NCBI RefSeq assembly: GCF_006345805.1
Contig: NC_042997.1
Location: forward strand, 125,736,001 to 125,800,000
DNA: 64,000 nucleotides
Direction of reading: 5' to 3'
Source of the DNA: Octopus sinensis
Lineage: Eukaryota
Both the position numbers and the translations under genes were made by a program. This document shows positions 7,908-60,610 of this stretch, piece after piece. The notes under the pieces are model-generated. The model ran no database searches and was not told the origin of the DNA. It was given only the letters and a program-made list of their open reading frames with translations. Numbering within the stretch: position 1 is the first letter of the stretch; every line of letters begins with the position of its first letter.

Positions 7908-10900
7908 GCTTCTACTATAGCCTCGGGTCGACCAAAGCCTTGTGAGTGGATTTGGTAGACGGAAACTGAAAGAAGCCCATCGTATATATATATATATATA
8001 TATATTTGTTTGGTTTGTTTGGCATCCTTTCTGTCTCGGGAGACAATGGAGTTGCGCATTTTTTTTTTTTTTTTTTCTAGGTCTAGTCCGGCTGTTATAT
8101 TTTATTTCCTGTTACATTTCTTGCTGTGGCTGTGTAGTCCTATCCTGGACAAACACTCCCTCTGGCAGGTACTGCAAATGTAGCGAAGACTGTTCCTGGC
8201 CTGATTGTAGTGCCATGGTCTCTTGTTTATGTCTCTTCCTTTCTTTCCATTTCTCCTCTCTCTTTCTGTCACTCCTCTGTATACCCTCTTTTACTGTACG
8301 TCGCCATTCTCCACGGTTGCCGGCGACTGCCTCCCAACCGCTAATGTTGATGTTGCAGGCCTTCATATCCCTTTTGCAAACATCCTTGTAACGCAAGATC
8401 GGTCTACCCACAGACCTAGTACCCCTAGCAAGCTCTCCGTAGAGTATGTCCTTGGGGATTCTGCCATCTTTCATACGGCTAACATGCCCAAGCCATCTCA
8501 TACGTCTTTGTGTGAGGAGTGCAAACATGCTTGGTATTCCTGCTTGCCTGAGGACATCTTTGTTGGGGATATGATTCTGCCATTTGATGTGGAGGATTTT
8601 TCGGAGGCAGCGCAGGTGAAAGATGTTTAGGCGACGCTCTTGGCGTGTGTATAGCGTCCAGGTCTCGCTTCCATACAGTAGAGTGCTGAGTACACATGCC
8701 TGGTAGATCTTCATTTTTGTGGTCTTGGTCAGCTTATTGTTGTCCCAAGCCCGTTTGGAGAGTTGGGCCATCGCAGCAGCTGCCTTGCCAATGCGTATAT
8801 TGAGCTCAGCGTCAAGGGATAGGTTGTAGGTGACGGTAGAGCCCAGATAGGTAAACTTCTCCACCTCTTGTAATCTGTGGTCTCCAATATGTATGTTTGG
8901 GATGTCCGATGTAGCCTGGCCCATGATGTTGGTCTTCTTAAGGCTGATAGCTAAGCCAAAGTCGTTACATGCTTGCTCAAAACAGTTAATGAGCCTTTGG
9001 AGGGCTTCTTCTGTGTGTGTTACCAGAGCGGCATCATCAGCAAATAACATCTCCTTGATCAGGACGTTTCTGATTTTGGTCTTGGCACGCAGGCGCGAGA
9101 GATTGAACAGTTTCCGTCACTTTACTGTGCAAGAAACACTCCATCATCTGATGTCTGAAAGGCATGTGACAGCAAGAGTGAGAAGAAGATGCCAAACAAT
9201 GTAGGAGCGAGGACACAGCCTTGCTTTACCCCGTTTTTTATTTGGAAGGCGGCTGATGTTGAACCGTTGTGCTGTATGGTGCCTTGCATGTCATCATGGA
9301 AAGACTTGATGATCCTCAGCAGCTTTGGTGGACATCCGATTTTTTGGAGCAGGAGGAAGAGGCCTGTTCTGCTTACCGAGTCAAAAGCCTTTGTTAGATC
9401 AATGAAGGCCATATATAATGGCATTTTCTGCTCTCTGGACTTCTCCTGAAGTTGGCGTATGGAGAATATCATATCGATAGTTGATCTGCTTCTTCTAAAG
9501 CCACACTGCGATTCCGGATAGATTCGAGAAGCAAGTAGTTGTAGCCTGGCCAGGATAACGCGGGCAAAGGTCTTTCCAAAGTGCTTAGAAGGGATATACC
9601 ACGGTAATTGTTACAATCACCACGGTCACCTTTGTTTTTGTAGAGCGTAATGATGTTGGCATCCCGCATATCCTGAGGGACTGTACCCTCTTCCCAGCAC
9701 TGACACAGAAGCTCATGAAGGTGCCGAAGCAGGATGGTGTTTTTGCCGGCTTTGATGATCTCTGAGGGGATGCCGTCTTTTCCCGGAGCCTTATTTCTTG
9801 CTAGGGAGTCAACAGCCTTGGTGAGCTCTGCTATAGATGGCGGACTGTCAAGTTCGCACATGACTGGCAAGATCTTGACACTCTTGACTGCAGCCTCAGC
9901 CACTGTGGTCTCCCGTGAGTAGAGATCCTGGTAGTGCTCCACCCATCTATTCATTTGCTTGCCTTGATCCCTGATGAGATCTCCAGTAGTTGATTTCAGA
10001 GGGGCTGACTTGGTTGCGGATGGACCGAGGGCCTTCTTCAAACCAGCATACATCCCACGGGTGTCGCCCCTGTCAGCAGCTGACTGGATACTCTGACAGA
10101 TTTCCTGCCAATACCTATTTGCACAGCATCTGGCTGTCAGTTGGGTTTTATTTCGTGCCTTTCTGAGTTCTTCGAGTGACTTTGTAGAAGAGTCACTCTT
10201 GTATTGCACCAGAGCTGCACGCTTTGCTTCGATAACTGGCTCCAGCTCTGAGAGCCCAGCATTGAACCAATCTGGGTTTTGCCTTTCTCTCATGCCGAAA
10301 GTATCCAATGATGTCGTATACAAGGCTTCCCTGATATAGTCCCACCTACTTTCAGCAGAGGAGGTTGGGCAGCTACTGAGGGCAACCTTGATAGAAGCAG
10401 CAAAACATTTTCGCAGTGTAGGGTCCGAGGTTCTGGCGGTGTGTTGATGCGTGGTCGGCCCACTTTCTTGGAGCGATGGACTTTTTTAGGGAGAATCCTC
10501 ACCCTGCTTCTAATTAGTGAGTGGTCTGTGTCACAATCCGCACTGTGGTAACTGCGGGTCAATAGAGTGGAACTCAGAAAGGATCTCCGTGTAATGATGA
10601 GATCCAGCTGATGCCAGTGGTGAGATCTTGGATGTCTCCAGGATGCCTTGTGGGATGGCTTGCTGGTGAAGAATGTGTTTGTGATGCACAGGTTGTGGTA
10701 TGTGCAGAATTCGAGTAGTCTCTGACCATTGTCATTCATGTTGCCAATACCAAAGTGTCCAACACAAATGGGCCACGAATCATGGTCAGATCCCACGCGA
10801 GCGTTAAAATCCCCTAGAAGGTAGATATTTCAGTCGTTGGTATATTTTCTAGGACACAGTTGAGATCTTTGTAGAACTGGTCCTTGGTCTCCTCTGAGCT

Positions 10901-11838
10901 GTAGAGAGTGGGAGCATAGATGCTGAGTAGATGTACTGAGCCAGAAGAAGTCGAGAGGCGCAGTGAGAGGATACGCTCAGTGCCTCCTGATGGTGGTTCT
11001 ATTGAGGAGAGTAGTGAGTTTCTCACTGCAAAGCCAACGCCATGTTGACGAGGTTCTTCTGGATCTCTTCCCTGCCAAAAGAAGGTGAAGTCCTGCTCTT
11101 TGAGTCTGCTGTTTGAGGGAAGTCTTGTCTCCTGCAGCCCAGCAATATCTATGTTGAGCCTCTTTAGTTCACGGTCAATGATGGCCGTTTTCCTTGTGTC
11201 TTCAATACTGAGAAGATCGTCAGATATTCCAGGACACATGGTCCTGACATTCCAGCTTGCCAACTGCAGAACTGGTGTTTTCTTGAATTTTAGTTGCTTG
11301 CCTAGTGCAGAGGTTGCAGGCCGCTTTTCGAGTCGTACTCTTAGCTCCAAGCACCCAATGGAACAGGCGGCTTGTGGCGGGTCAGCACCTTTTAACTGGG
11401 AGCTGCCCAGCTTGAGGTGGGCAGTAGCTAACCAATAGGACACGGAAGTCCCTCCCACCGGCAGAGGTAACCCGTAGCGTCCATATTTTACGCCAATCTG
11501 AATGGACTTATCACTCGTAACTGTTACCTCCGTGTTGTTTCTGCAGCTTTTTACAGCAGCACTGAAGTGTCCTCTCCAGTTTGTATATGTTTGTATATGT
11601 ATATGTGTGTATATGTTTGTGTGTCTGTGTTTGTCCCCCACACACACACACAACATCGCTTGACAACCGATACTGGCGTGTTTACGTCCCCATAACTTAG
11701 CGGTTCGGCAAAAGAGACCGACAGAATAAGTACTAAGCTTACAAATAATAAGCTCTGGGGTCGATTTGCTCGACTAAAGGCGACGCTCCAGCATGGCCAC
11801 AGTTACATGACTGAAACAAATAAAAGAGTAAAAGAGTA
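7908..11838 (+). mobile_element. SINE family B copy split by the RTE insertion (halves 7908-8003 and 11581-11838)
   Basis: Left half CTTCTACTATAGCC...GAAGCCCATCG(TA)n and right half (TG)n...GCTCCAGCATGGCCACAG...AAAGAG are contiguous in intact copies (e.g. 31355-31740). Confidence 0.8.
8004..11580 (-). mobile_element. Near full-length RTE-clade LINE (APE endonuclease + RT), frameshifted
   Basis: APE motifs LASWNVRTM, IAGLQETRL, HGVGFAV, SIYAPT, HWHQLDLII, SDHSL-like DTDHSL; RT motifs NYRGISLL, FIDLTKAFD, GVKQGCVLAPTLF, LFADD, FTYLGS; coding split over five ORFs; 5' UTR to about 11580; (CCAAA)-like 3' tail. Confidence 0.93.
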
Positions 11839-16657: not shown

Positions 16658-17754
16658 GTCTAAGAAGGAAATTTCACAATGTCACCCCCACTGCTACCAA
16701 TCAACTGGTCTTATTCACACCCTGTATTTTCTGTTAATTCATGGTTAATACCTATATATATCATAATCCTTTCTACTGTAGGTGCCTAAAACTTTGGGAG
16801 AGGAGGTAAGTCGATCACATCTACCTCAGTACTTGATTGGTACTTAATTTATCGACCCCGAAAGGATTAAGACAAAGTCGACCTCGGCGGAATTTGAACT
16901 CACAACGTAATGGCAGACGAAATACCTATTTCTTTACTACCCACAAGGGGCTAAACACAGAGGGGACGAACAAGGACAGACAAACGGACTAAGTCGATTA
17001 TATCGACCCTAGTGCGTAACTGGTACTTAATTTATCGACCCCGAGAGTCGACCTCGGCGGAATTCGAACTCAGAACGTAGCGGCAGACGAAATACCGTAA
17101 AGCATTTCGCCCGGCGTGCTAACGTTTCTGCCAGCTCGCCGCCTTAACCTATGTATATATCATAACATACTATGATGTCAGCAAATAGCCAGCTGATTTT
17201 AGCCCTTTGCCTATCTGCCGCCCGTCACTCAACCAATCGTTATTTCTCGTCTGTCTACCGTTATTGGAAGTTGTGTGATTTTGTTATGTAGTTTCTTCTG
17301 TTCAAATTCACTTTGATGCCATCAGCAGAAATGTCAACATGCCAGTCGATAGTTCGTTTGAAGATCCTTTCTTTTGGGACTTATGAACGCACAGTAGTTT
17401 GCATACTTTGAAACCTAGTCTTTTACAGACTGTATCATGTCTCGTGCCACCCGTATCGCACGTGGTCACTTCGCGCCCTTCCATAAAAATCAAGGATTTG
17501 ACAACAGCTCGACGATTATTGTAACATGTGAGACATTGAAAAAAGAACTTATCAAGCATCCTCCTATTTCACAGAAAAGGCACCTCCTTCAACTCCTGAT
17601 AACAGAAGAATTAGGGGATAAAAAGCTTTTCAGTGAAATAGCTCTTAGTGGTAATATTGAAAAACGAAATTTTTGAATAACGTTTTCTGAATCGCCTTCC
17701 GTTACGGATTTTACAGAATAGTTTGTCGGGCTCCTAAGTATTTCATTCTGAATA

Positions 17755-22546: not shown

Positions 22547-22765
22547 TATATACTCTTTTACTTCTTTCAGTCATTTGACTGTGGCCATGTTGGAGCACCA
22601 CCTTTAGTCGAGCAAATCGACCCCAGGACTTATTCCTTGTAAGCCTGCTACTTATTCTATCGGCCTCTTTTGCCGAACCTCTAAGTTACAGGGACGTAAA
22701 CACACCAGCATCGGTTGTCAAGCGATGTTGGGGGGACAAACACAGACACACAAACATATACACAC

Positions 22766-22838
<73 letters not shown>

Positions 22839-24149
22839 TACGACGGGTTTCTTTCAGTTTCCGTCTACCAAATCCACTCACAAGGTTTTGGTCGGCCCGA
22901 AGCTATAGTAGAAGACACTTGCCCAAGGTGCCACGCAGTGGGACTGAACCCAGATCCATTTGTTGGTAAGCAAGCTACTGACCACACAGCCACTCCTGCG
23001 CTGCAGTTCATAGCATTATTTTCCCTTTTTTTTGTTGTTGTTGTTGATTCTAATATAATTCACTTGTATTGTAGTGTTATTTGGATATTTTTTCCTTTTC
23101 GTATTGTGCACTCGAATCAGGACGAGTTAAGACCCATAGAAGCCCTAAGCACTTAAAAGATTTTGATGCCCCCCATATATATATGTAATTTGATATATAA
23201 ACAATAATAAACCATATTTCTTTTTTTTTTTTTTTCGAAATGAATCAAAACCAACAGCAAGATGGAAGATAATGTTTTTGTATATTTCTACTTTATTTAT
23301 ATTTGAAAAGTTTTCTCTTACTTTTTTTAATAGCAAAGTCTTTGGTCAAATCCTCAAAACTGATCATACGTAACACATCTGCTTCTATATTTAGTAGAGA
23401 TGAGGCACCCTGAATACTATTTTAGCAAGTTTAAGGTGATTTCTTTTGTATCGTAAACTATTTACCATTTCTGTGGTCTCCCCCCCCCCTTCCTTTGATA
23501 TCCTAAGCACTTGCTTATTTTGCTTAATGTCAAATAGAGTGCTTAGCTGGAATGTTTTATTGTATAGAATAATATAATCCAATGCTGATTCAAAATGAGG
23601 GGTTATTTGTCATTTCTTATTTCTTTATTGTCCCCAACGGGCTAAACATAGAAGGGACAAACAAGGACAGACAAACGGATTAAGTCGATTACATCGACCC
23701 CAGTGCGTAACTAGTACTTATTTGATCGACTCCGAAAGGATGAAAGGCAAAGTCGACCTCGGCGGAATTCGAACTCAGAACGTAACGGCAGACGAAATAC
23801 CTATTTCTTTACAACCCATAAGGGGCTAAACACAGAGGGGACAAACAAGGACAGACAAACGGATTAAGTCGATTACATCGACCCCAGTGCATAATTGGTA
23901 CTTAATTTATCGACTCCGAAAGGATGAAAGGCAAAGTCGACCTCAGCAGAATTTGAACTCAGAACGTAACGGCAGACTAAATACCGCTAAGCATTTCGTC
24001 CGACGTGGAAAGTTAATCCCTTAGCATTTCCTTGCTCAAGTTTTGTCTTCATATCACCTCCAATAATTTTGTCATTGTGTTTGAGAATTACTTTAGATAG
24101 ATCAGTGAGATTGTGATAAAAATGAAACATGTCTTGCTCATGTGTTGCA

Positions 24150-26516: not shown

Positions 26517-26919
26517 CCAAGGATCGAAGTGTGAGAAGAAAGTTAGCTTCATCAAATCCGTAGTAAATATAAACAACAACTTTCAGGGACAATAGCAGTT
26601 TATTGAGACGGAAGGTTGTGGATTTTTTTTCTTATCGAAGTACGATAAATTGAAAAAAAATTCTTTATATTTCACGGTGGGCAACCAGGGTTTTACTCTT
26701 TTACTCTTTTACTTGTTTCAGTCATTTGAATGTGGCCATGGTGGAGCACCGCCTTTAGTCGAGCAAATCGACCCCAGCAGTTATTCTTTGTAAACATAGT
26801 ACTTATTCTATCGGTCTCTTTTGCCGAACCGCTAAGTTACGGGGACGTAAACACACCAGCATCGGTTGTCGAGCGATGTTGGGAGGACAAACACAGACGC
26901 ACAAACATACACGCACATA

Positions 26920-26973
<54 letters not shown>

Positions 26974-27180
26974 TACATATACATATATACGACGGGCTTT
27001 TTTCAGTTTCCATCTACCAAATCCACTCACAAGGTTTTGGTCGGCCCGAGGCTATAGTAGAAGACACTTACCCAAGGTGCCACGCAGTGGGACTGAACCT
27101 GGAACCATGTGGTTGGTAAGCAAGCTACTTACCACGCAGCCACTCCTACGTCTATATGCGAATAAGAATACAAGAGTTAA

Positions 27181-28779: not shown

Positions 28780-29553
28780 CAGCGTTTCTCAAACTATCTG
28801 ATGTGGCGTACCGGCAGTTTTTTTTTTCTCGTCCAGGGACTGCTAATATTTCTTAGTAATATTAATTGATACCGAAAACAATATATATAATGGATATAAT
28901 AAAAGTTGACAATCTTTTTTATCTTATAGTTATTTAGTAAACAAATAGGATCTTTTCACTTTCTTTGTAACTAAACACTTTTAAACTTCGTATACTGGTA
29001 GAATGTGTTACATAAAACATCTTTTTCTCTTGGCTTTCTTGAGAAAACTCTGTAGTTTGTAAGCTATTTGTTGTTAAATTTCTTGCATTTCGGCAATTTC
29101 AACTAATCAATGACGTCTATTGAGGTGAATACAATTTCTGCTGTTGTTTGTCGACAACAACTTCCTGCGGTCTGTATTTAGTTTGTCACTGTTATTTATG
29201 ACATATTTCATATCAGTCACGTTCGTATGAATAAAAGATTGTGGGGTTAGGGTTAGAGTTAGGGTTTGGGTTAACAACAAATAGCTTACAAACTAAAGAA
29301 TTTTCTCAAGAAAGCCAAGAGAAAAAGACGTTTTATGTAACACATTCTACCAGTATACGAAGTTTAAAAGTGTTTAGTTACAAAGAAATTATTTTTTAAA
29401 TCTGCCAGTCAAAGTGAAAAGATCCAACAAATAATACAATATTACATAAGCATTTTATAATGTTTCTTTCTTTTCTGGAAACTTGCCGCGTACGGGCAGC
29501 TGATGGCTCACAAACTGGCACTGGTCGGCGGACCACCGCTTTGAGTAGAACTG
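28780..29553. mobile_element. hAT MITE carrying a nested element
   Basis: CAGCGTTTCTCAAA / TTTGAGTAGAACTG termini; perfect 8-bp TSD CCTTAAAT. Confidence 0.8.
28948..29425. mobile_element. Long-TIR MITE (GG...CC termini, 8-bp TSD; Merlin-like assignment tentative)
   Basis: GGATCTTTTCACTTT termini, more than 100 bp inverted arms, TSD AACAAATA both sides; truncated inverted relative at about 39265-39512. Confidence 0.7.
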
Positions 29554-29889: not shown

Positions 29890-30032
29890 AGAAGAAGAAG
29901 AAGAAGAGAAGAAGAAGAAGAGAAGAAGAAGAAGAAGAAGAAGAAGAAGAAGAAGAAGAAGAAGAAGAAGAAAGAAGAAGAAGAAGAAGAAGAAGAAGAG
30001 AAGAAGAAGAAGAAGAAGAAGAAGAAGAAGAA
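29890..30032. repeat. (AAG)n microsatellite
   Basis: Direct reading. Confidence 0.95.
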
Positions 30033-30185
30033 ACAGCAACTAGGGGGAAGAATTTTTTGACTAGATTAAGATTGTAGAGTTAGTTTTATTCCCCCTACAT
30101 TTCGACAGGTTTATTCTCCAGCCATCTTCAGGTAATTTGTGTGCATACTACTACAGCTATCTCTCTCCCTCTTTATCTCTATCTT

Positions 30186-30272
<87 letters not shown>

Positions 30273-30342
30273 TAGTGACCTCTGGCTGTCAAGCAGGAAA
30301 GCAAAACGAAAAAGGAATCTAATGAGAGTAATCTCCCTCGAC

Positions 30343-30377
30343 CTTCTCGAAAATTCTCGGATATTCTAGAAGCTTTC
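30343..30377 (+). promoter_or_regulatory. Heat-shock element (HSF binding array), 7 pentamer units
   Basis: TTC(30344)-tc-GAA(30349)-aa-TTC(30354)-tc-GGA(30359)-ta-TTC(30364)-ta-GAA(30369)-gc-TTT(30374): exact 5-bp alternation, 5 perfect and 2 single-mismatch units. Confidence 0.8.
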
Positions 30378-30382
30378 AATTA

Positions 30383-30570
30383 ACTTCCGGATGACGTGGA
30401 AGTCAGGGTCTTCCGATTCGTACCTTATATAAAGCGAACGCAATTCTAATTTCGCATTCCTTTTGTCTGTCAGTTCCTAGGCGTACGCCTTGAGCTACGC
30501 CACTCGCACACACGCGCATGCGCGCATATTCGCCTCATTTACTTTGAAACATGTAGTTAACAAAGTATGT
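30383..30570 (+). promoter_or_regulatory. Core promoter and probable non-coding first exon (ETS, UPRE/CRE-like, TATA, initiator, NRF1-like, donor)
   Basis: ACTTCCGG 30383-30390; TGACGTGG 30392-30399; TATATAAAG 30426-30434; GCATTCC about 28 nt after TATA and TCAGTT 30470-30475; GCGCATGCGC 30514-30523; candidate donor AAA|GTATGT at 30565. Locally CpG-rich. Confidence 0.6.
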
Positions 30571-30852
30571 TCATGTAATATGTTAGAAGCCTTTTCGTTC
30601 AAACTATTCTTATATGTTAATGCATTACATCCAATCATAAATATGTTATGACTTATGAATGTCTCACAAGTTCTTATTTTTCTTGTCGTTTTACGTACAA
30701 GAGGGTGACCCCTCTTCCTCGCATGCAATTGTAAAATTGTAGGTTGTCGCATACTGACATCACTACACACTCATCATTCAGAGACTCGTGGACCATATCA
30801 AACCTGCACCGCCTCTCCGAACTACATAAAATCATCATCGCTTTATTCATTA

Positions 30853-31229: not shown

Positions 31230-31354
31230 TTTTTAGGGCGGTGAGCTGGCAGAGGTTTTAGCACGCCGGGCAGAATAATTAGCAGCATTTCGTCCGCTTT
31301 TGCGTCCTGAGTTCAAATTCCACAGAGGTTAATTTTTGCCTTTCATCTTTTTAG

Positions 31355-31740
31355 GTGTAGGAGTGGCTGTGTTGTAAGTAGCTTGCTTACCAACAACATG
31401 GTTCCGAGTTCAGTCCCACTGTGCGTCACCTTGGGCAAGTGTCTTCTATTATAGCCTCAGACCGGCCAAAGCCTTGTGAGTGGATTTGGTAGACGGAAAC
31501 TGAAAGAAGCCCTTCGTATATATGTATATGTGTGTGTTTGTGTTTGTCCCCCCCCCAACATCGCTTGACAACCGACGGTGGTGTGTTTACGTCCCCGTAA
31601 CTTAGTGGTTCGGTAAAAGAGACCGATAGAATAAGTACTAGGCTTACAAAGAATAAGTCCTGGAGTCGATTTGCTCGACTAAAAGCGGGGCTCCAGTATG
31701 GCCACAGTCAAATGACTGAAACAAGTAAAAGAGTAAAAGG
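31355..31740 (+). mobile_element. tRNA-derived SINE family B (representative full copy)
   Basis: Head TGGCTGTG..GGT (A box), GTTCAGTCCC (B box), CCTTGGGCAAGTGTCTT central domain, internal (TA)/(TG)n, tail GGCCACAGTCAAATGACTGAAAC. Other copies near 2745-3060(+), 22552-22995(-), 26697-27150(-), 31975-32355(-), 54860-55010(-), 57175-57475(-), 57495-57845(+), 63630-64000(+). Confidence 0.85.
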
Positions 31741-32145
31741 GTAAACTGATTAAGGAACTTGCAATAAAATCTCTTAAGTTTGCAACAAATGCCAGGAAGG
31801 AATCACAATCTTTGATGATCTTCCCTCTTCTCTGGTGACACTACATACATAACATTGTTAAAACCGCTCCCCACCATCAAACACAAACATATCTCTTCAA
31901 AGCCATAGAATACGCTCTAAACATATGTTGACCCTCTACAAAATTCAAGTAACACACGCACATATATATATTCTTTAATCTTTTACTTGTTTCAGGCATG
32001 CTGGAGCACCGCCTTTGGTCGAACAAATCGCCCCCAGAATTATTCTTTGTAAGCCTATCGGTGTTTTTTTTACCGAACCGCTACGTTACGGAGACGTAAA
32101 CCCACCCAAAACGGTTGTCAAGTGATGGTGGGGGGCACAAACACA

Positions 32146-33200: not shown

Positions 33201-34242
33201 TTCGAATGCACGTATATATAATGAATGGGAGAGAGGAATTTCACCCGAGTCTACGCTACGAAGATATTGATCCCAGTGCTTGAATAGTACTTCAGTTGAT
33301 TGACCCCGGTAGCTTGACATGTAAAGTTGACCTCTGCGCCATTTGAATTCAGAACGTAAAGGTCTGTATCTAAACACCGTCAAGTATTCTGTCCGATGAT
33401 CTTACGATTCTACCAACACATCGCCCTCAATGAAGTGAATCAACAGAATTTTTAAAAAAACAATAATATTACATAGCTCGGCAAAACATGTTCTTCAAGA
33501 GAATGAATCATTTAGTTATGAGGAACAGAGGAAATTTGACGTTCCAAGTAGAACAACTTCGTCAGAGAGAGAGAAGGAGGGAGATTAAATATTTACTGTT
33601 TCCCACAAATAATTCTATCTCACACGTTATTAGATATCTTTTTTTCCTCAGGACAAAATTACTTATTCGACATTTTTTTATCGAAGAGCCATTAAACTGG
33701 TCCGTAGTATAAACCTTGTAGACCAGTTAAGTATGAAAAGATAATCCATCTTCTGTGGAATTTGAACTGGAAACGTAAAAGAAAGTAGTTAGATACTACT
33801 GGTCTACCGATTCTGCCAATATCGACCCACGCACTCACATACACACACTCACACACACGCGCGCACACACACACACACTCAGTCACTCATACGCACACGT
33901 GATATCTTAATGTTAACTATGCAAAGGTGATGTAATGGCAGGGATGTTAGCGAACTAGACTAAATGACTAAACGTCTGTATTATTTAATACGCAATATTT
34001 AATTGCGTCTGAGGCGGCGAGCTGGAAGAATCGTTAACACGTCAGACGAAATGCTTAGAGGCATTTCGTCCGTCCTTACAGTCTGACTTCAAATTCCACC
34101 GAAATCGGCTTTGCTTTTCATCCTTTCGGGGTCGGTAAAAAAAGTACCAGTTGAACAGTGGGGTCGATGTAATCGATTTACCTCCTCCCCCGAACTTTCT
34201 GGCTTTGTACCAAAATCCGAAATCAATATTTAATTATTTTCT

Positions 34243-34640
34243 TAGGCGGTGAGCTGGCAGAAACGTTAGCACACCGGGCGAAATGCTTAGCGGTATTTCG
34301 TCTGCAGCTACGTTCTGAGTTCAAATTCCGCCGAGGTCGACTTTGCCTTTCATCCTTTCGGGGTCGATTAAATAAGTACCAGTTAAGCACTAGGGTCGAT
34401 ATAATAGACTTAATCCGTTTGTCTGTCCTTGTTTGTCCTCTCTATGTTTAGCCCCTTGTGGGTAATAAAGAAATAGGTATTTCATCTGCCGTTACGTTCT
34501 GAGTTCAAATTCCGCCGAGGTCGACTTTGCCTTTCATCCTTTCGGGGTCGATAAATTAAATACCAGTTGGGTACTGGGGTCGATCTAATCGACTGGCTCT
34601 CTCCCTGAAAATTTCGGGCCTTGTGCCTAGAGTAGAAAAG
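34243..34640 (+). mobile_element. tRNA-derived SINE family A (representative dimeric copy within cluster 34010-35110)
   Basis: Head GGCGGTGAGCTGGCAG (A box) ... GAGTTCAAATTCC (B box), central GCCTTTCATCCTTTCGGGGTCGAT..AAGTACCAG. Other copies near 1595-1996(-), 16790-17147(-), 23615-24010(-), 36425-36760(+), 38760-39070(+), 39783-40200(+), 41050-41600(+), 52570-52780(-), 58396-58600(+), 59280-59500(-). Confidence 0.85.
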
Positions 34641-36774
34641 AATATTTAATTACTTTCTAAGGCAGCGAGCTGGCTGAATTCCATTAACATTCCGGACGAA
34701 ACGCTTAACGGTATTTTGTCCGTATTTACATTCTGGGTTTGAATCTGACTTTGCCTTTCTCCCTTTCGGGGTCAGTAAAATAAGTGCCAGTTAAGCACTG
34801 GGATCGATTTAAGTAACTTAGCCCCTACCCCAAAACTGCTGGCTTTGTACCAAAATTTGAAATCAATATTTATTTACCTATTTCTTTATTACCCACAAGG
34901 GGCTAAACACAGAGGGGACAAACAAGGACAGACATAGGTATTAAGTCGATTACATCGACCCCAGTGCGTAACTGGTACTTAATTTATCGACCCTGAAAGG
35001 ATGAAAGGCAAAGTCGACCTCGGCGGAATTTGAACTCACAACATAACGCAGACGAAATACCGCTAAGCATTTCGCCCGGCGTGCTAACGTTTCTGCCAGC
35101 TCGTCGCCTTGATCAATATTTATTTACCGTTTACGTTCAAATAGAACAGGGGTTGACTGCCTTTTATTCCTACTGGGGTGTCAATAAATGATAAGTAATG
35201 CTTTGAGGTCGTTTCAATCACTTTTGTCCTCCTCCTCTTCCTCCTGTTCTTCCTATAAATTGTATGTCATTGTACCAAAGTCAGAAATATTTATTAAATG
35301 TATAACACTTAATATAACGTATCAGCGGTTTTACGGTTGTGTAATATACAGAGAAATGTGAAATGGTAAGAAAATAGTCAGGTGGAATTGGAAGCTAAAG
35401 AGTACTGTTTCATTCAAAGAATGGGTGGAATGCACTCGAGGCTCGACTCTTAAAGAAAAAAAAATATTTCTCTTGTTAATTCTTTATTTTTATAGCCCAC
35501 CAGTCACGAAATCTCTTACCTCTGTATTGCTTCTCTGACAATTTTGATTAGAGGTGCAGATTTTTTTTTTTTTTTTTTGTCTATCTGTCTAGAAACTTCT
35601 GTTTTGTTATGTTACTACTGCAACAAAAACTGCAGCAGCTTTTGTTGTTGTTGTCGTCGTGATCGCCGTCGTCGTGGTCGTCGTCGTCATTATTTTTACT
35701 GCTGGCATAGTCTAGATAATAGAGATGTAGTGAAGATGAGAAGCGACGGGATGAAAGAGATAAAAATGAATTATATAAGCAAAAAGTTGTCAAATATTAT
35801 GGCTCAACTATTTCATATATCCATTTTTTTATTATTATTATTATTATTTGCACTCCGTTTCTAGAATGTAGCTGTGTCGGCCAGCATTCGAAGATATTTT
35901 CTCTTTATACATGTGCTTTGGGAAAAAGTGTGAATACCACTCGCTCTCTTTGATCCCCTACCCGCTGAGAATTGATGATCTGGTGACCTTAGTGCTTAGA
36001 TATTACGTAAAATCATTTCAATATGTGACTGCGATATTCTAAATTCGCTCCAATCGTTTTAACACACACACACACACATTCACTGAATACACTAAAAATA
36101 GACTTTTAAGTTGCTACACCACAAATATGTGTTAACAACAATAGAGCTGAGGGAAAATACCTCAGCGGAGCTTTATACATATTAAATATGTGTGTTGGCT
36201 TCTCTTACAGAAATGTGAGACTTAATTTATTCGTTATGATCAAGAGTGACCAACCGGTCCGGTGATTCTTGATATTCTTATGCAACCCCTACGCAAACGC
36301 ACGCCTACACACACAAACACACACACACACACACTTTATGAAACAAGTCACTAATATTTTCTTGTACATTGTCCTTGTGGAAAATTCCAAAAATAAATGG
36401 CAATAATTATTATTGTTATTAGAAGGGCGGCGTAAGTCGGCGATCTGGCAGGATCGTTAGCGCATTGGACGAAAATAATTTGTGGTATTTCTTCCGATTC
36501 CTTCAGTAAATGGTTGGCATCGATGTAATCGACTTGTTTCCTCCCTTCAAAATAGCTGGCCTTCTACCAAAATTAGAATGAGTTATTCGAAGGACGGTAA
36601 GGTGGCAAGTTCTGAGTTCAAATTTACACCGAGGTCGACTTTGCTTTTCATCTTTTAGGAATCGATAAATGAAGAACAAGTCGAGTACAGGGGCCGATGG
36701 TATCGACATACCTCTTTCCTTGATATTGCTGATCTCGTGCAAAATGTTAGAAAGAATTATTAAAAGGATGCTAT

Positions 36775-38490
36775 AATGTTGTCGGACAAACAGGCGACTA
36801 AACATCAGCAAATTAGAACGATACAAGGTGAAACAGAACCACAGTGAAGACCTTAGAAGCAAACTGAGCCAACTTGACATTGGTACAAAAGTAGCTAAAG
36901 AGGACTGAGTGATGTTCAGAGACGTGGTATACAACACTGCACTCACTCATCTGGGCCAGAACACGCGTGGACTCCAAGACTGGTTTGACGAAAACAATGA
37001 AGAAATTTAGAAGATACTCGATGAAAAGCAGGACAGCAGATCGGCTCCCGAGAAAGCAGCCTAGACTGCTATCAAAAGCAAGATGCAGGCAAAGCTCAGA
37101 GAAATGAAGGATTCCTGGCTCAACAACAAGGTGGATAAAATACAGAAGTATGCTGACAGCAACAACTTCAAGCACTTCTATGATACCCTGAAAGTCATCT
37201 ACGGGTTTCAGTCAACTGGAACATCACCACTGCTCAATGCTGACGGGATTATTTTCCTCACTGACAAAAATGCAACCCTGAAAAGATAGGCAGAACACTT
37301 CAACAAAGTCCTGGCCAGGCTTTTCTCGATCAACGCTGAGGTTATTGCTCGCAAGCCCCAGTTGACATCAACACTTCTCTGGCAGAACATCCAACAGATG
37401 CAGAGGTTCAGAAAGCGGTTAAACTTCTCTCAAATGGCAAGGCGCCAGGCTCTGACGCCATCTCAGCTGAAATATACAAGGTAGTGGGGGACAGTCTTGG
37501 CGCAAAAGCTCACCAACCTCTTTCAGACCATATGGCAACAGGAAATTGTTGTCGGGAGTTCAAGGATGCTTTTATTGTCCGTCTCTACAAGAAAAATAAG
37601 AACAGACAGTCCTGTGACAACCACTGAGGAATTTATCTCGTTACATTGCTGATATGATGCTCGCAAGAGTCCTCCTTAACCGCCTCCTCAACACATAGAA
37701 AACAGGCATCTACCAGAGAGTCAGTGACTTCAGAGAGGGCCCAGGGATAGTCAACATGAAATTTGCAGCACGTTAACTCCAGAAGTTTCAGGAATAAAAC
37801 AGGGACCTATATACGACGTTTGAAAACTTAACAAAGGCCTTAGACACCGTCAGTCATGAGGGATTTTGGATGATCATAGAAAAGTTCGGCTGCCCAGACA
37901 AATTCATTAGCCCAGTGCGTCACCTTCATGACGGCATGCTCGCTCAGGTGCTGGACAATGGAGATTCTTCCGTTGCATTTCCAGTCACCAACGGAATGAA
38001 GCAAGGCTGAGTACTTACACCTATGCTGTTCAACATGATGTTCTGAACCATAGTGACGGATGCTTTCCGCAACATCGACGAAACCAGAGTCAAGATCAGA
38101 CTCAGGATTGATGGCAGACTCTTCAACCTGCTGAGACTACAGGCAAAGACCAAGGTAAAAGCGCTCCAAAGACATATTTAAAGCCTCTCTGAAGTGCTTT
38201 TAGATCAACCGCAACACCTGGGAAATGCAGACACCGGACCACCTTGCCCAGTGTAACTGCACCAACAGAGGTACCACCTCCTACGAACAGAACAAGATCG
38301 CGGGAGCACAAAGAGAACGTGAGCTGCGCAAGTCCAGGGCCAACTCTTTGCCTTCATTCCCAGTAGGTCACCAGTAGCTGACCTGTAGCAGAAACTTCCG
38401 AGCATGCTTCAGCCTGGTCAGCTATAGCCGGACGCAGCATGGTCCATCTTCTTCTCCCTGGTCATCGTTGACAACAGCGGACGAATATCA
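36775..38490 (+). mobile_element. Degenerate RTE (BovB-like) LINE fragment, RT catalytic core deleted
   Basis: DWFDENN, IQKYADSNNFKHFYDTLKVIYG, NGKAPGSDAI, EKFGCPDKFI, FPVTNGMKQG; jumps from LRLQAKTKVK to KDIFKASL. Confidence 0.8.
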
Positions 38491-40609
38491 TTACGAACCA
38501 ACGGGCAAAGTAAAACACTATGAACTCTATAGGCATAACTACAGCATACATAAATTAGCATTGAGTCCCCTAGGTCCTTGAGGCTGTCGGACAACTGACC
38601 AGTGTGTCTATGCCTTAAGACAGTGCTGGGTGGAGCGCCGAACTAAATATCATACAATATTCAGTTTCTTTGTTGGTTTTGTGTTTTGTTTTTGTTTTTT
38701 TTTTGGGGGGGGGGGGTGAGGCGGAAGGGTGGTCTGAATTCAGACCGCGCCGAGACAGATTTTACCTCTTAATATTTCTATACCAGTTCTGAGTTCAAAT
38801 TCCGCCGAAGTCGACTTTGCCTTTCATCCTTTCGGTGTCGATAAAATAAATATCAGGTGCGGACAGGGGTCGATCTAATCGACTGGCTCCCTCCCCAAAA
38901 ATTTCGGGCCTTGTGCCTAGAGTAGAAAAGAATATTTCTGTACCAGTCTCAAATTCTGCCAAGGTCGACTTTTGAGGCCAACAAATTAAGTACCGTTTGG
39001 ACACCGAGGTCGTTGTAATCGACTTAACTCTCTCCCCCGAAAATGCTAGCCTTGAATTAAAATTTGAATTGAAATTTGAAATATTTCTATACCAGTCACG
39101 TACTGAGGTTAAAACATAATCGATTATTCTCTCTCATAAAATGCGCCCTTTCGTGGCAAGTTTAGAAGTTATTATTGTTATTGTAGCCACCGCCGCTTCC
39201 GTCGATGTCGTTGTTTAGCCCAGGGTCAGCCTCGACCAGGAAAAAGACTTAATATCAAATATACACCGCCGGAAGTTCTTATTGACAAACGACAGCAGTA
39301 ATTCTATTCAGCTGAATACACGTCATTGATTGGTTGAAATTACCGAAATAGGACAACTTTAACGTGAAATAACTTCGTAAATATAAGTTTTTCTCAAAAA
39401 TGCTAAGAGTAAAAGATGTTTTATATGACATATTCTACCAGGGCCGAAGTTTGAAAATGTTTGGTTACAAAAAATTATTTTTTTAAATCTGTCGGTCAAA
39501 AGGTAAAGATCCCAAAGATGTCCCGGCAGTGAACATTTCATCTTGTTTATCCTAGACTTTGTCCTTCCTGTCTTAAAGACGGTGTGATTTGAAGGAAATT
39601 TAGCTGCTATTTCAAGCATGTGAAGTAATCACGTAGAGACTTTTGCTGTGACCCATTATTATCGTCGTTGTTTATGCTAAGAGATGTGAATTGGCGATTT
39701 AGCAGACTCTTTAAACAATCAGTGTAAAATACTTTTCGGCATTTGGTTCTGTGCTCAAATCTTACCAAGACTAGCTTTTTCTTAAGGCGGCGAACTGGCA
39801 GAAACGTTAGCACGCCGGGCGAAATGCTTAGTGGTATTTCGTCTGGCGCTACGTTCTGAGTTCAAATTCCACCGAGGTCGACTTTGCCTTTCATCCTTTC
39901 GGGGTCGATAAATTAAATACCAGTTACGCACTGGGGTCGATATAATCGACTTAATCCGTTTGTCTGTCCTTGTTTGTCCTCTCTGTGTTTAGCCCCTTGT
40001 GGGTAGTAAAGAAATAGGTATTTCGTCTGCCGCTACGTTCTGAGTTCAAATTCCGCCGTGGTCGACTTTGCCTTTCATCCTTTCGGGTTCGATAAATTAA
40101 GTACCAGTTACGCACTGATTCGATGTAATCGACTTAATCCGTTTGTCTGTCCTTGTTTGTCCCCTGTATGTTAGCCCCTTGTGGGCAATAAAGAAATAAA
40201 ACTAGCTTTTTCTTTTAGGTAGCAATAGATAAAGTACCAGTCAAATACTGGAGTTTTTAAGGTGGGGGGGGATCTTCGTTGTTGTTTTCTATTTCACTCA
40301 TCCAGTTTTAGCTACGATGTGCAGTGAGGGATTCATGGAAGACTACTGACAGTATCTGCGATATCAAGATCTTACTGGCATAATCAAAAAGTTCAGAAGT
40401 GCTAACCACATTCCGGACAAAATGACGCTAAGCATTTCGCCTGGTGTGCTAACAATTCTGCCAGCTCACCACTTTAAGCCCCAAAATAGTATTAGTCAAT
40501 GTTTTTTTGTCACTGCATAATTAATTCTAATTAATATATTCAAGGTTCGCTGCATTCAGTATATCAACAACGAGCGATCCAAATTTTGAATTCTATGAAT
40601 AAATAAATA

Positions 40610-40692
40610 GACAGACAGACAGACAGACAGATAGACAGATAGACAGATAGATAGATAGACAGATAGATAGATAGACAGATAGATAGATAGAC

Positions 40693-40761
<69 letters not shown>

Positions 40762-40780
40762 TAGATAGATAGATAGATGG
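40610..40780. repeat. (GATA/GACA)n microsatellite
   Basis: Direct reading. Confidence 0.95.
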
Positions 40781-41715
40781 CGTATAAGGGTGTACATACG
40801 TAATCGACTGAGCCATCCCTCAAGATGTTTGCCCTTGTTAGAATCCATTAATAAAGGAACAGTGGGACGGGAGAAGTGGAACACTGACGAACTGATTAAC
40901 AGTAAATAAACACTTCCTTTGCGTCCTGAGTTCCATTGTCGTTAGCTTTATAATTCATTTTTCTGGGTTTGATAAAATAAGTAGTTGTTTAGATGAATCC
41001 AGGTAAAAAGTCACAGGTAAAAAACGTCACAGGAAAAAAGGGGTTTTATCCGGGTGAAATGCTTAGCAGTATTTCGTCTGCCATTACGTTCTGAGTTCGA
41101 ATTCCGTCGAGGTTGACTTTGCCTTTCCTCCTTTCGGGGTCGATAAATTAAGTACCAGTTACGCACTGGGGTCGATGTAATCGACTTAATCCCTTTGTCT
41201 GTCTTTGTTTGTCCTCTCTGTGTTTAGCCCCTTGTGGGTAGTAAAGAAATAGGTATTTCGTCTGCCGCTACGTTCTGAGTTCAAATTCCGCCGAGGTCGA
41301 CTTTGCCTTTCATCCTTTCGGAGTCGATTAAATAAGTACCAGTTACGCACTGGGGTCGATATAATCGACTTAATCCGTTTGTCCATTCTGTGTTTATCCA
41401 CTTCTGGGTAGTAAAGAAATAGAAATAGGTATTTCGTCTGCTGTGACGTTCTGGGTTCAATTTCCGCCGAGGTCGACTCTGCCTTTTATCTTTTCGGAGT
41501 CGATAAAATAAGTACCAGTTGAGTATTGGGGTTGATGTGATCGACTATCTCCTCTCCAAAATTTCAGGCCTTGTGCCTATAGCAGAAAAGTTTATTACCG
41601 GTCACCGTTTATTAGATAAGCCCTGTTTGCAGTAACGTAGCTAAAGTGTGTTCCAACCGGAGTAACCAATGAGTTTACCGCTTCTTCCTTCCCCCAGGCC
41701 CCGAATCCTATACAG

Positions 41716-42010: not shown

Positions 42011-42659
42011 CCATACAGGCTTATACAGCAGACCAAAACAGTGCTACTCTCGTAAAAGTCTCCCCGGGACGAACAGCTCTCCTTGGCCCCTCTAGCTACG
42101 CTACTGCCTGTTCGCGTAGATTTATGACAAAGGGCATTCCAGTTACAACCATTCAGGCTTTCTCTCGGCGTTGTCTATCTAAGACTACAATATTCAAGGT
42201 GTCCTACTATCTTTCGAAAACAGTAGGATGTAATATCAGAAAGATTTGCTGGTTGTTTCTAAAGGTTTGAACGAGCACACAGAGGTTCTTTCTAAAGGTT
42301 TGTATAAGTCCCAGTTCTTAGAATTGTTTTGTCCCAGGTCAGTTGTGACTGTCCCGTCTTCTTGTTTTTCAGATTCAATTTGTTTGGAGTCACGTTATCC
42401 AATATGCTCATCTTCAAATCCGTAAGGAGTGATTTGAAGATTTGGCTATTATGTCTAGCTGGTTGACTAATCACGTAGATGTTAGCTCCCTCGTTAGCTT
42501 GTATAAGTACCACTAACATTCTGTCACAGAATCGGTCGTGTATACCCTTTTCCTACCGTGAATTGGCGTTTAGTCAAAATGAGAAATCATTCTTTTGAGA
42601 AGTTTCACGCACATTTATTTACTTACTGGTTAAAAACGTACCTATTTTAAAATATAGTG

Positions 42660-43135
42660 GAAGCTAGCTACGTGACGTCAGTGGGAACTATGTTATAGCC
42701 GTCATAAATAGCATCTTACTCTAGTCTAGCTGCTTGCCAGAACAGAACCAAATAGGATTCTGCGAGGGCTTCTCATTAGTAGTGACTTGTTCAGATATAT
42801 ATATATTTATATTTATACCCACCCACAAGAATTTCGAATCGCATTTCGCCTGCTTCAGCTCTTCCTCACAAATGTTTGCAACTAATTAATTCATACATCA
42901 CCGACTTCTTCTACTCACCCCTCCCCATCCGAGTTAGCTTCGGTCTGGTTGGATTTTTAGGGTTTGTGACCATCTCTTGTGACTTTTAATGTAATAGTCT
43001 CTGCTAGATTTCACAAAATGATTACAGCCCGGATGAATGGATTCCCTTTTTACGTCGAATAATCGTCAACTTCTAGAAATATCTACGAACAGTATTCTTT
43101 CGAACTTAACTCAGAGCGAGAGAGATAAACGAACG

Positions 43136-43178
<43 letters not shown>

Positions 43179-43221
43179 ATAATATCAACAATAATAAAAG
43201 AACGAAGGAGGATCGCTAAAC
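42660..43221 (+). promoter_or_regulatory. Proximal upstream region/5' UTR of SQSTM1 with full CRE and partial HSE
   Basis: TGACGTCA 42673-42680; CATAAATA 42703-42710; TTCTAGAA 43071-43078 with imperfect third unit; elevated CpG relative to flanks. Confidence 0.4.
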
Positions 43222-43396
43222 ATGTCATTGACAATCAAGGCATATATCCTTTCAGGTCGATCTAAGACTGATTCCGTTGAGATACGAAGGTTCAATGTAT
43301 CGGACAATACTGTCAGGAACTACCACCAACTTGAGGATAAAGTATATGAAGTGTTTCCTAGTTTGAACCGAACTGGAATCAATTTACACTGGAAAG
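43222..43396 (+). CDS. SQSTM1: Sequestosome-1/p62 first coding exon (N-terminal part of PB1 domain); rest of gene not found in window
   Basis: Translates MSLTIKAYILSGRSKTDSVEIRRFNVSDNTVRNYHQLEDKVYEVFPSLNRTGINLHWK, matching the p62 PB1 pattern (LT[VI]KAY, EIRRF, V..[LV]FP.L, HY/W[RK]). Ends at AAAG|GTAAGT donor, phase 1, at the position where vertebrate SQSTM1 exon 1 ends as I recall it. The ORF-track extension into (CT)n is intronic read-through. Confidence 0.88.
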
Positions 43397-58337: not shown

Positions 58338-58387
<50 letters not shown>

Positions 58388-59570
58388 AAGCATCATAAGG
58401 CAGCGAGCTGGCAGAAACGTTTGCACACCGGGCAAAATACATTTATGAGTTCAAATTCCTCCGAGGTCGACTTTGCCTTTCATCCTTTCGGGGTTGATAA
58501 ATTAAGTACCAATTATGCACTGGGTTCAATGTAATCGACTTAATCCCTTTGTCTGTCTTTGTTTGTCCCCTCTATGTTTAGCTCCTTGTGGGTAGTAAAG
58601 AAATAAGAAGAAGCATCACCACCATCACCAGTAGCACCATAAAAAAAAACACCACCATTGCCAGTACTACCACCACCACCACCATCATCACCAACACCTA
58701 CACCACTACAATCACCACCACCACTACCAGTGTCACCACCATCACCACCACCAACAACACCAAAAACTAACAGCACTACCACCACCACTACTACTATCAG
58801 TAGCATCACCAAAACCAGCACAGCACCACCTCCACCACCACCCCAACAGCACCACTGACAGTATTATCAAAAACATCAGTACCATGAGCCAGCCATGTGG
58901 CCAGGTTTGGTATATATATATATATATATATATATTTGGTATACATATCTGTTCCCAGTAATATGTAGGTGTAAATAGTAACTAAATATCCTTACTGGTG
59001 TATTATTACAGTCTAGTAACTAACTTTCACTCCTCTAAAAATTTCTGGCCTTGTGCCTTTGTAAGAAAATTTTTTTTCCTTATACACGTACACACACACA
59101 CACACAGAGAAAGAAAAACAGATACCCTGAGAGAGAGTGAGAGAGAGATATTTATATCTACAATTATATGTTTTTACCCAGTAAATTTTTACAAAAAAAT
59201 ACAATGTTATCTATCTATCATCTATCTATCTATCTACCTCTCTATCTATCTATATATCTATTTATTTATCTGTCTATCTTATTTCTTTATTACCCACAAG
59301 AGGCTAAACATAGAGGGGACAAACAAGGACAGACAAAGGGATTAAGTCGATTACATCAACCCCAGCACGTAACTGGTACTTAATTTATCTACCCCGAAGG
59401 ATGAAAAGCAAAGTCGACCTCAGCGGAATTTGAACTCAGAACATAAAGACAGACGAAATACTACTAAGCATTTCACCCAGCGTGCTAACGATTCTGCCAG
59501 CTTGATCTATCTATCTGCATACATGTATATATGGGTGTGTCTGTGTGTGTATGTATATATATGTATGTAT

Positions 59571-60607: not shown

Positions 60608-60609
60608 AT

Positions 60610-60610
<1 letters not shown>

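What the first reader, a model, noticed from the sequence alone, without database searches (positions are those of the whole stretch)
30343..30570. Orphan heat-shock-type promoter 12.8 kb upstream of p62: candidate stress-inducible distal promoter of SQSTM1
Seen: a 7-unit HSE in exact 5-bp register, about 50 bp upstream of TATATAAAG, with ACTTCCGG (ETS), TGACGTGG, an initiator-like site, GCGCATGCGC and a GTATGT donor about 110 nt after the predicted start. Established: alternating nGAAn arrays next to a TATA box are the hallmark of HSF1 target promoters; TGACGTGG is the UPRE consensus bound by XBP1s/ATF6-type factors; p62 is the autophagy receptor for aggregated proteins. Inference: no recognisable ORF lies between this promoter and the p62 ATG, so it may drive a non-coding exon spliced onto SQSTM1, coupling heat-shock and UPR signalling to selective autophagy. 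Candidate acceptors are at 42372 and 43007. It could instead drive a lncRNA.
Basis: partly seen in the sequence, partly recalled or inferred. Interest (0 to 1): 0.72.

Follow-up and report, generated by a model that had tools for sequence, protein, structure and literature searches.

The report
Orphan heat-shock promoter upstream of octopus p62
A textbook heat-shock-type promoter really does sit 12.9 kb upstream of the octopus autophagy-receptor gene p62/SQSTM1, but p62 has its own conserved promoter next to its start codon, so whether the upstream element feeds p62 or makes a separate non-coding RNA is still open.

Summary
Window 30343-30377 holds seven contiguous nGAAn/nTTCn units, five perfect and two with one mismatch. 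A TATATAAAG box follows 48 nt later, an initiator-like A 30 nt after that, and the best local splice donor 109 nt further on. None of 100 shuffles of the window gave such an array. The block is single-copy in 386 kb of cephalopod DNA.

The window is Octopus sinensis CM016859.1:125,736,001-125,800,000. The ORF at 43222 is coding exon 1 of sequestosome-1 (XP_029638908.1).

The claim that this is a p62 promoter is neither shown nor excluded, and new evidence weakens it. p62 has a proximal promoter with a cAMP-response element (CRE) and a TATA-like box, plus a leader of about 0.5 kb carrying upstream ORFs. Both are conserved between Octopus and Argonauta. Cuttlefish/squid mRNA contigs show the equivalent leader unspliced. 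The proposed acceptors are weak, unconserved or outside the conserved block. No HSE-TATA unit lies within 10 kb upstream of p62 in Argonauta or in a decapod.

Best reading (about 0.4): a real HSF-responsive promoter acting on the p62 locus as a stress-specific upstream promoter or enhancer. Main rival (about 0.3): an independent heat-inducible non-coding RNA. Heat induction of p62 is already known in other animals, so interest is moderate.

The parts
30343..30377 (+). Heat-shock element array: seven contiguous inverted nGAAn units (five perfect; GGA and TTT are one-mismatch units)
   Evidence: (no match in 100 shuffles)
30383..30399 (+). ACTTCCGG (ETS-type core) abutting TGACGTGG (UPRE/CRE-like). 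Together they form the near-palindrome ACTTCC-GGATGACGT-GGAAGT.
   Evidence: TGACGTGG is unique in the window; ACTTCCGG occurs twice counting both strands
30426..30434 (+). TATA box TATATAAAG, 48 nt after the HSE array
30456..30564 (+). Predicted non-coding first exon (109 nt). It starts at the initiator-like gCATTCc (A at 30456, 30 nt after the TATA box). It holds GCGCATGCGC at 30514-30523 and only two tiny upstream ORFs: ATG at 30518 with 9 codons, and ATG-TAG at 30551.
   Evidence: The transcription start and the exon are inferred from spacing, not shown.
30565..30570 (+). Candidate splice donor AAA|GTATGT. It is the best donor in the 450 nt after the predicted start but only moderate: about 5.6 bits against 12.0 for the real p62 exon-1 donor, on an approximate matrix.
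30271..30849 (+). Island of unique sequence containing the promoter. It is bounded by a (CA)n microsatellite upstream and by the terminus of a repeated element at 30850 downstream.
42651..43221 (+). Conserved proximal p62 promoter and 5' leader. It holds the CRE TGACGTCA at 42673-42680 and an invariant GTCATAAATAG at 42701-42711. It also holds conserved upstream ATGs at 42872, 42989 and 43018, and a TTCTAGAA dimer at 43071-43078.
   Evidence: Decapod mRNA and genome colinearity.
43222..43396 (+). Coding exon 1 of sequestosome-1/p62 (first half of the PB1 domain), with donor AAG|GTAAGT. The next exon lies about 36 kb downstream, outside the window.
42351..42372 (+). It is strong by sequence, but it lies upstream of the conserved proximal promoter in DNA that does not align with Argonauta.
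42990..43007 (+). It lies inside the p62 leader, has a weak pyrimidine tract, and its AG is not conserved in Argonauta.

Best explanation
The block is a genuine, single-copy RNA polymerase II promoter of the heat-shock type. Under proteotoxic stress, trimeric HSF would bind the seven-unit HSE. The TATA box 48 nt downstream would then position initiation at about 30456, giving a 109-nt non-coding exon that ends at the GTATGT donor.

It is not the ordinary p62 promoter. That promoter is a separate, conserved CRE/TATA-like element 12.3 kb further down, with a leader of about 0.5 kb that carries upstream ORFs.

The HSE block is the only HSE array in the 43 kb upstream and 20 kb downstream of the p62 ATG. 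It points at p62 with no gene between them. I therefore think it most likely supplies the heat-shock input to the SQSTM1 locus. It could do so as a stress-specific upstream first exon or as a promoter-like enhancer acting on the proximal promoter.

Shown: the motif anatomy and its non-random nature, its single-copy status in the DNA available, the identity of p62, and the existence of the proximal promoter. Inferred: HSF binding, the transcription start, use of the donor, and any functional link to p62.
For: - The HSE array is far beyond chance, and TATA, initiator and donor sit at canonical spacings.
- CpG observed/expected is 1.58 against a window mean of 0.62.
- The block lies in a 580-nt unique island between a microsatellite and a TE terminus. 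No second copy exists in 386 kb of cephalopod DNA.
- It has the same orientation as p62, and the 12.6 kb between them holds only TE fragments.
- No host gene is recognisable in the 30 kb upstream.
- Introns of 13-36 kb are normal in this gene.
- The proximal p62 region has only a two-unit TTCTAGAA, too short for an HSF trimer site, and there is no other array in the window.
- p62 transcripts rise on heat shock in C. elegans (PMC6906454 abstract; PMC5316864). HSF1-dependent p62 expression is reported in human cells (Samarasinghe 2014, cited as reference 12 in PMC5591275).
Against: - No transcript, junction or binding data could be reached.
- p62 has its own conserved promoter, and decapod mRNAs show an unspliced leader with no upstream exon.
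- No conserved or convincing acceptor exists in the p62 leader.
- The donor is only moderate.
- No HSE-TATA unit lies within 10 kb upstream of p62 in Argonauta hians or in a decapod genome contig. The arrangement is therefore not demonstrably ancestral.
- Splicing from the distal exon to p62 exon 2 would skip the start codon.
- One human study found that HSF1 restrains rather than induces p62 mRNA (PMC5591275).
Confidence: 0.4

Rival explanations
1. The promoter is functional and heat-inducible, but it drives an independent transcript. This would be a spliced or unspliced long non-coding RNA, or an unannotated small gene, that ends before p62 and has no role in p62 expression.
For: - The predicted exon has no usable ORF.
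- No conserved acceptor exists in the p62 leader.
- The canonical p62 mRNA architecture in cephalopods is a proximal, unspliced leader.
- An AATAAA lies at 31763 on the + strand.
- HSF-driven non-coding RNAs are known elsewhere: Drosophila hsr-omega and human satellite III (my own knowledge).
Against: - No Rfam family or small-RNA host signature occurs in 29.8-43.4 kb.
- No block conserved with Argonauta that could be an exon lies in the last 10 kb before p62.
- An orphan hsp70-type promoter with no cargo is unusual.
- Transcripts started 12 kb upstream on the same strand usually run into the next gene.
Confidence: 0.3
2. The block is a non-functional or decaying relic. It could be the orphaned promoter and 5' UTR exon of a heat-shock gene whose coding part was lost or moved by rearrangement in this TE-rich region. 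It would be silent or transcriptionally irrelevant today.
For: - No HSP or any other coding sequence follows it.
- The surroundings are almost entirely TEs and microsatellites.
- Conservation could not be tested, and no counterpart was seen within 10 kb of p62 in Argonauta or a decapod.
Against: - Five perfect and two near-perfect units, an intact TATA box and a high CpG content argue for either selection or very recent origin.
- TEs have inserted around the 580-nt island but not within it.
Confidence: 0.2
3. The block is the promoter end of a low-copy transposable element, for example a solo LTR carrying HSEs, so its position near p62 is accidental.
For: - The island begins with TG and ends with CA (30272 and 30849), as LTRs do.
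- The genome is TE-rich.
- Heat-responsive LTRs exist in other organisms (my own knowledge).
Against: - No second copy occurs in the window, in the rest of the O. sinensis p62 locus, in O. vulgaris, in A. hians or in the decapod loci, 386 kb in all.
- There is no target-site duplication and no terminal inverted repeat.
- The repeat that starts at 30850 has its terminus there in every copy, so it does not include the block.
Confidence: 0.07

Closest known systems
hsp70-type heat-shock promoters (Drosophila hsp70, human HSPA1A)
   Same: A contiguous array of inverted nGAAn units lies a few tens of bp upstream of a consensus TATA box, with an initiator about 30 nt downstream. The promoter region is compact.
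   Different: No chaperone coding sequence, or any other, follows it. The first coding exon on the strand is p62, 12.8 kb away. Inducibility is untested.
Heat-shock/HSF-1 control of p62: C. elegans sqst-1 (PMC5316864, PMC6906454) and human SQSTM1 (Samarasinghe 2014, cited in PMC5591275)
   Same: The same gene family sits downstream. The idea that the heat-shock response raises the selective-autophagy receptor is already established in those systems.
   Different: In those systems regulation was shown at the mRNA level, not through a distal TATA promoter with its own exon. In the octopus nothing has been measured. One human study reports the opposite sign (PMC5591275).
Alternative upstream first exons of human SQSTM1 (own knowledge, not tested here)
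   Same: Non-coding first exons upstream of the main promoter.
   Different: The human variants splice to exon 2 and yield an N-terminally shortened protein. Here that route would remove the start codon and half of the PB1 domain, and no in-leader acceptor is convincing.
HSF-driven non-coding RNAs: Drosophila hsr-omega and human satellite III transcripts (own knowledge)
   Same: An HSE promoter with no protein product and repeat-rich DNA downstream.
   Different: The 184-nt repeats downstream belong to a family dispersed across the window in both orientations. They are not a locus-specific tandem array. No RNA evidence exists.

Membership tests
HSF-target heat-shock promoter | At least three contiguous inverted nGAAn units in 5-bp register | tested here: met
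   Seven units, five of them perfect, at 30343-30377. None of 100 shuffles matched.
HSF-target heat-shock promoter | HSE located just upstream of a core promoter (TATA and initiator at canonical spacing) | tested here: met
   The TATA box lies 48 nt after the HSE, and the initiator-like A lies 30 nt after the TATA box.
HSF-target heat-shock promoter | HSF binding and stress-inducible transcription | not testable with these tools
   No expression or ChIP data are reachable. Exact-ORF look-ups in public assemblies found nothing.
HSF-target heat-shock promoter | Drives a chaperone or stress-protein gene | tested here: not met
   No HSP or other host ORF lies on the + strand between 30.5 and 43.2 kb.
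Alternative promoter / first exon of SQSTM1 | Upstream, on the same strand, with no intervening gene | tested here: met
   p62 identity.
Alternative promoter / first exon of SQSTM1 | Splice junction from the distal donor to a p62 exon | not testable with these tools
   No O. sinensis transcript contigs could be retrieved. Decapod mRNA contigs show only the proximal leader.
Alternative promoter / first exon of SQSTM1 | A credible, conserved acceptor upstream of the p62 ATG | tested here: not met
   The 43007 acceptor has a weak pyrimidine tract, and its AG is absent in Argonauta. The 42372 acceptor lies outside the conserved block and leaves 10 upstream ATGs. The AG at 43200 follows a (CT)17 tract that is specific to O. 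sinensis.
Alternative promoter / first exon of SQSTM1 | Conservation of the distal promoter at orthologous loci | tested here: inconclusive
   The O. vulgaris flank ends 1.66 kb short of the syntenic site. No HSE-TATA lies in the 10 kb upstream in A. hians or in a decapod contig, but the element could lie further out.
Transposon-borne promoter | Multiple copies, terminal repeats, target-site duplication | tested here: not met
   A single copy in 386 kb of cephalopod DNA, with no terminal repeats. Genome-wide copy number was not testable.
hsr-omega-like heat-shock lncRNA | HSE promoter, no ORF, locus-specific tandem repeats, heat-induced nuclear RNA | tested here: inconclusive
   The promoter and the lack of an ORF are met. 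The downstream repeats belong to a dispersed family. The RNA is untestable.

The most novel reading that the evidence does not exclude
Octopus has a dedicated heat-shock promoter 12 kb upstream of p62. On stress it either produces a p62 mRNA with a short alternative leader that bypasses the proximal leader and its conserved upstream ORFs, or produces an hsr-omega-like heat-shock non-coding RNA. The first route would switch both transcription and translation of the autophagy receptor. The second would be the first such RNA described in a mollusc.
Probability: 0.3. Interest if true: 0.55.

Novelty: new member of a known kind. Interest (0 to 1): 0.36.

Why it matters
If the block is active, it gives a concrete cis-element linking the heat-shock response to selective autophagy in a cephalopod. 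Thermal-stress biology matters for this group in aquaculture and under ocean warming, and almost no promoters have been characterised in it. The block would also be a compact, strong, inducible promoter candidate for cephalopod transgenesis.

The concept itself, HSF raising p62, is already known from nematodes and mammals. The gain is therefore a new instance and a possible new architecture, not a new principle.

The more solid by-product is the definition of the canonical p62 promoter and its conserved leader with upstream ORFs in cephalopods.

Tried and rejected
1. Protein word-index searches with the 59-aa exon and with a 158-aa N-terminal query returned nothing, although the orthologues are in the database. 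The full HMMER scan and a search with the Argonauta protein found them.
2. Pfam does not recognise the half PB1 domain of exon 1 on its own. PDB phmmer gave only weak sequestosome-1 hits. Identity was settled through the orthologues.
3. I looked for further p62 exons in the window and found none. Exon 2 lies 36 kb downstream.
4. I tried to reach the syntenic distal region in other species. Loci are fetched around the coding range with at most 10 kb of flank. The O. vulgaris locus stops 1.66 kb short. In the cuttlefish genome locus, exon 1 is more than 11 kb upstream of exon 2 and was not included.
5. Exact-sequence look-ups of window ORFs, and of the O. vulgaris and A. hians exon-1 ORFs, aimed to find ORF-called assemblies that could be walked. 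None is in the collection.
6. Decapod 5' UTRs do not align with either octopus region, being too diverged.
7. An HSE-like site in the decapod contig at -3.8 kb lies in repeat-like DNA with no TATA box and was rejected.
8. Rfam and tRNA scans found nothing.
9. A metagenome scan for the 30-mer found nothing.
10. A divergent gene on the minus strand was rejected. Only a MITE-like hairpin and TE fragments lie upstream, with no Pfam hits.
11. I checked whether the alternative 'MA' first exon of the O. bimaculoides model could be the distal exon. No matching ATGGC-donor pattern was found.
12. The bacterial promoter/terminator scan is irrelevant to a eukaryote.

Full report
**What is there**

Window 30343-30377 reads cTTCt cGAAa aTTCt cGGAt aTTCt aGAAg cTTTc. 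These are seven pentamers in unbroken 5-bp register with alternating orientation. Five are perfect and two carry one mismatch.

The six-unit core pattern occurs once in the 64-kb window, and none of 100 dinucleotide-preserving shuffles produced it. From base composition alone I estimate about 0.3 such sites in a 2.7-Gb genome (my own arithmetic). A scan for arrays of four or more units finds nothing comparable elsewhere in the window.

The following elements come downstream:
- ACTTCCGG at 30383-30390 and TGACGTGG at 30392-30399. Together they form a near-palindrome.
- TATATAAAG at 30426-30434.
- An initiator-like gCATTCc whose A, at 30456, lies exactly 30 nt after the TATA box.
- GCGCATGCGC at 30514-30523.
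- GTATGT at 30565-30570.

TATAWAAR occurs 29 times on the + strand of the window. One falling in the right place by chance has a probability of about 2%.

The donor context is AAA|GTATGT, not AAG|GT. On an approximate metazoan donor matrix that I wrote from memory, it is the best donor in the 450 nt after the predicted start. It scores about 5.6 bits, against 12.0 for the real p62 exon-1 donor.

The predicted 109-nt exon has only a 9-codon ORF and an ATG-TAG.

**Context of the block**

The block sits in a 580-nt island of unique sequence, 30271-30849. A (CA)n microsatellite bounds it upstream. Downstream, a repeated element has its terminus at 30850 in every copy found.

CpG observed/expected is 1.58 in 30301-30600, against 0.62 for the window. 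Young repeat copies reach similar values.

No second copy of the island exists in the window or in the other cephalopod loci fetched, 386 kb in all. A metagenome scan for the core 30-mer also found nothing.

The 12.6 kb down to p62 consists of reverse-transcriptase fragments and SINE-like or tandem 184-nt repeats. There is no host ORF and no Pfam hit. Nothing in Rfam matches.

The 30 kb upstream likewise shows only TE-derived ORFs.

**Identity of the locus**

Window 33222-64000 is 100% identical to the locus fetched for Octopus sinensis sequestosome-1. That protein is XP_029638908.1 and the record is GCA_006345805.1 CM016859.1. The window is therefore CM016859.1:125,736,001-125,800,000.

The ORF at 43222 is coding exon 1 of p62, spanning 43222-43396 with donor AAG|GTAAGT. 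It matches 58/58 residues of the O. sinensis protein and 58/59 of O. vulgaris. It is 84% identical to the Argonauta hians 'sequestosome-1-like' protein, which Pfam resolves as PB1-ZZ-UBA.

Exon 2 lies about 36 kb further on, outside the window. A 12-kb intron would be unremarkable in this gene.

**The new finding that bears on the interpretation**

p62 has its own promoter. In an alignment of O. sinensis, O. vulgaris and A. hians, identity between Octopus and Argonauta is at the random level (0.32-0.42) upstream of about 42,650. It then jumps to 0.66-0.85 and stays high, with one dip, all the way to the ATG.

The conserved stretch contains:
- a perfect CRE, TGACGTCA, at 42673-42680 (TTACGTCA in Argonauta);
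- an invariant GTCATAAATAG at 42701-42711;
- conserved upstream ATGs at 42872, 42989 and 43018.

Between O. sinensis and O. vulgaris there are only 4 substitutions in 42,595-43,221 (0.6%). The intergenic DNA further upstream differs by 2.8%.

Five RNA-seq-derived p62 mRNA contigs from two decapod species carry 174-382 nt of sequence before the ATG. The longest leader is colinear with a decapod genomic contig from about 490 nt before the ATG, so it is unspliced.

The canonical cephalopod p62 transcript therefore starts about 0.5 kb before the ATG. In the window that is between roughly 42,680 and 42,740. The exact start is uncertain because the octopod-decapod alignment is loose.

The distal block is not needed to express p62. 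For it to add a leader exon, it needs an acceptor inside or before p62 exon 1.
- The 43007 acceptor has a poor pyrimidine tract, and its AG is replaced in Argonauta.
- The 42372 acceptor is strong, but it lies upstream of the conserved block and would yield an 849-nt leader with 10 upstream ATGs.
- An AG at 43200 follows a (CT)17 tract that is only (CT)5 in O. vulgaris and absent in Argonauta.

Splicing to exon 2, the usual route for an upstream first exon, would remove the start codon and half of the PB1 domain.

No HSE-plus-TATA unit lies within 10 kb upstream of p62 in A. hians or in the decapod contig. The one HSE-like site in the decapod sits in repeat-like DNA without a TATA box.

The O. 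vulgaris locus I could fetch ends 1.66 kb short of the syntenic position. The most informative comparison was therefore out of reach.

**Points in favour of a link**

- The block is the only HSE array in the 43 kb before and 20 kb after the p62 ATG.
- The proximal region has only a two-unit TTCTAGAA.
- The block points at p62 with no gene between them.
- p62 mRNA is known to rise on heat shock in C. elegans, in work tied to HSF-1 (PMC5316864; PMC6906454 abstract).
- HSF1-dependent p62 expression is reported in human cells (Samarasinghe et al. 2014, cited as reference 12 in PMC5591275). That citing paper itself found that HSF1 restrains p62 mRNA.
- Watanabe et al. (PMC5240838) place the HSF1 effect at p62 phosphorylation.

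**Verdict**

The motif anatomy is shown. HSF binding, the start site, donor use and any connection with p62 are inferences.

I rank the readings as follows:
1. A functional heat-shock promoter that serves the p62 locus as a stress-specific upstream promoter or promoter-like enhancer: about 0.4.
2. A functional promoter for an independent non-coding or unannotated transcript: about 0.3.
3. A silent relic of a lost heat-shock gene: about 0.2.
4. A low-copy transposon promoter: about 0.07.

The kind of element is known, and the idea of heat-shock control of p62 is known. What would be new is the architecture, and a first characterised stress promoter in a cephalopod. Interest is moderate.

The decisive data are simple and may already exist: heat-stress RNA-seq or long reads from O. 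sinensis, and the syntenic sequence in other octopods.

Noticed in passing
window 42651-43221: Conserved proximal p62 promoter and leader of about 0.5 kb. It holds a perfect CRE (TGACGTCA, 42673-42680) and an invariant GTCATAAATAG (42701-42711). It also holds three upstream ATGs conserved between Octopus and Argonauta (42872, 42989 and 43018), including a minimal ATG-TAA and a 14-codon upstream ORF. This suggests translational control of p62 through upstream ORFs.
   Followed up: partly
whole window: The window is Octopus sinensis chromosome record CM016859.1 (GCA_006345805.1), positions 125,736,001-125,800,000. Window 33222-64000 is 100% identical to the fetched locus L010.
   Followed up: yes
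window 43397 onward; L010 46486-46605: Only coding exon 1 of p62 is in the window. The next exon lies about 36 kb downstream (window-equivalent about 79.7 kb), and the coding range of the gene spans about 65 kb.
   Followed up: yes
window 43141-43176 and 40198-41050: Differences between O. sinensis and O. vulgaris next to p62. A (CT)17 tract just before the ATG is (CT)5 in O. vulgaris, and O. sinensis has a net excess of about 1.2 kb of 184-nt repeat units.
   Followed up: partly
proteins P0020, P0021 (loci L002 and O. bimaculoides): The public names of the orthologues look wrong. The O. vulgaris p62, which has PB1-ZZ-UBA, is called 'SDCCAG3 family protein-like'. The O. bimaculoides RefSeq model XP_014776332.1 is called 'ENTR1 family protein'. 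That model starts with an alternative 'MA' exon joined to exon 3, so it lacks the PB1 domain. It is either an alternative 5' exon or a model error.
   Followed up: partly
window 8115-11773 (-), 36816-38400 (+), 59778-62476 (both strands): LINE-type reverse-transcriptase ORFs and fragments. The 8-12 kb copy has long open frames of 160-340 aa. The 37.8-kb piece gives only a weak RVT_1 hit.
   Followed up: no
window 1589-2075, 16742-17096, 23614-24100, 34060-35060, 38766-41559, 58367-59449: A dispersed family of 184-nt units, often in short tandem arrays and in both orientations, with high CpG content. A second SINE-like family is present at ten or more sites (for example 22592-23000, 26743-27154, 31351-31745 and 63618-64000).
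   Followed up: no
window 28960-29077 and 29271-29388: A 118-nt inverted repeat, 97% identical, 193 nt apart. It is MITE-like, and a related copy lies at 39257-39512.
   Followed up: no
window 29890-30270: About 140 nt of (GAA)n, a (CT)-rich stretch and (CA)45 lie directly upstream of the HSE block. Microsatellites are common throughout this genome, so no meaning is attached to them.
   Followed up: no
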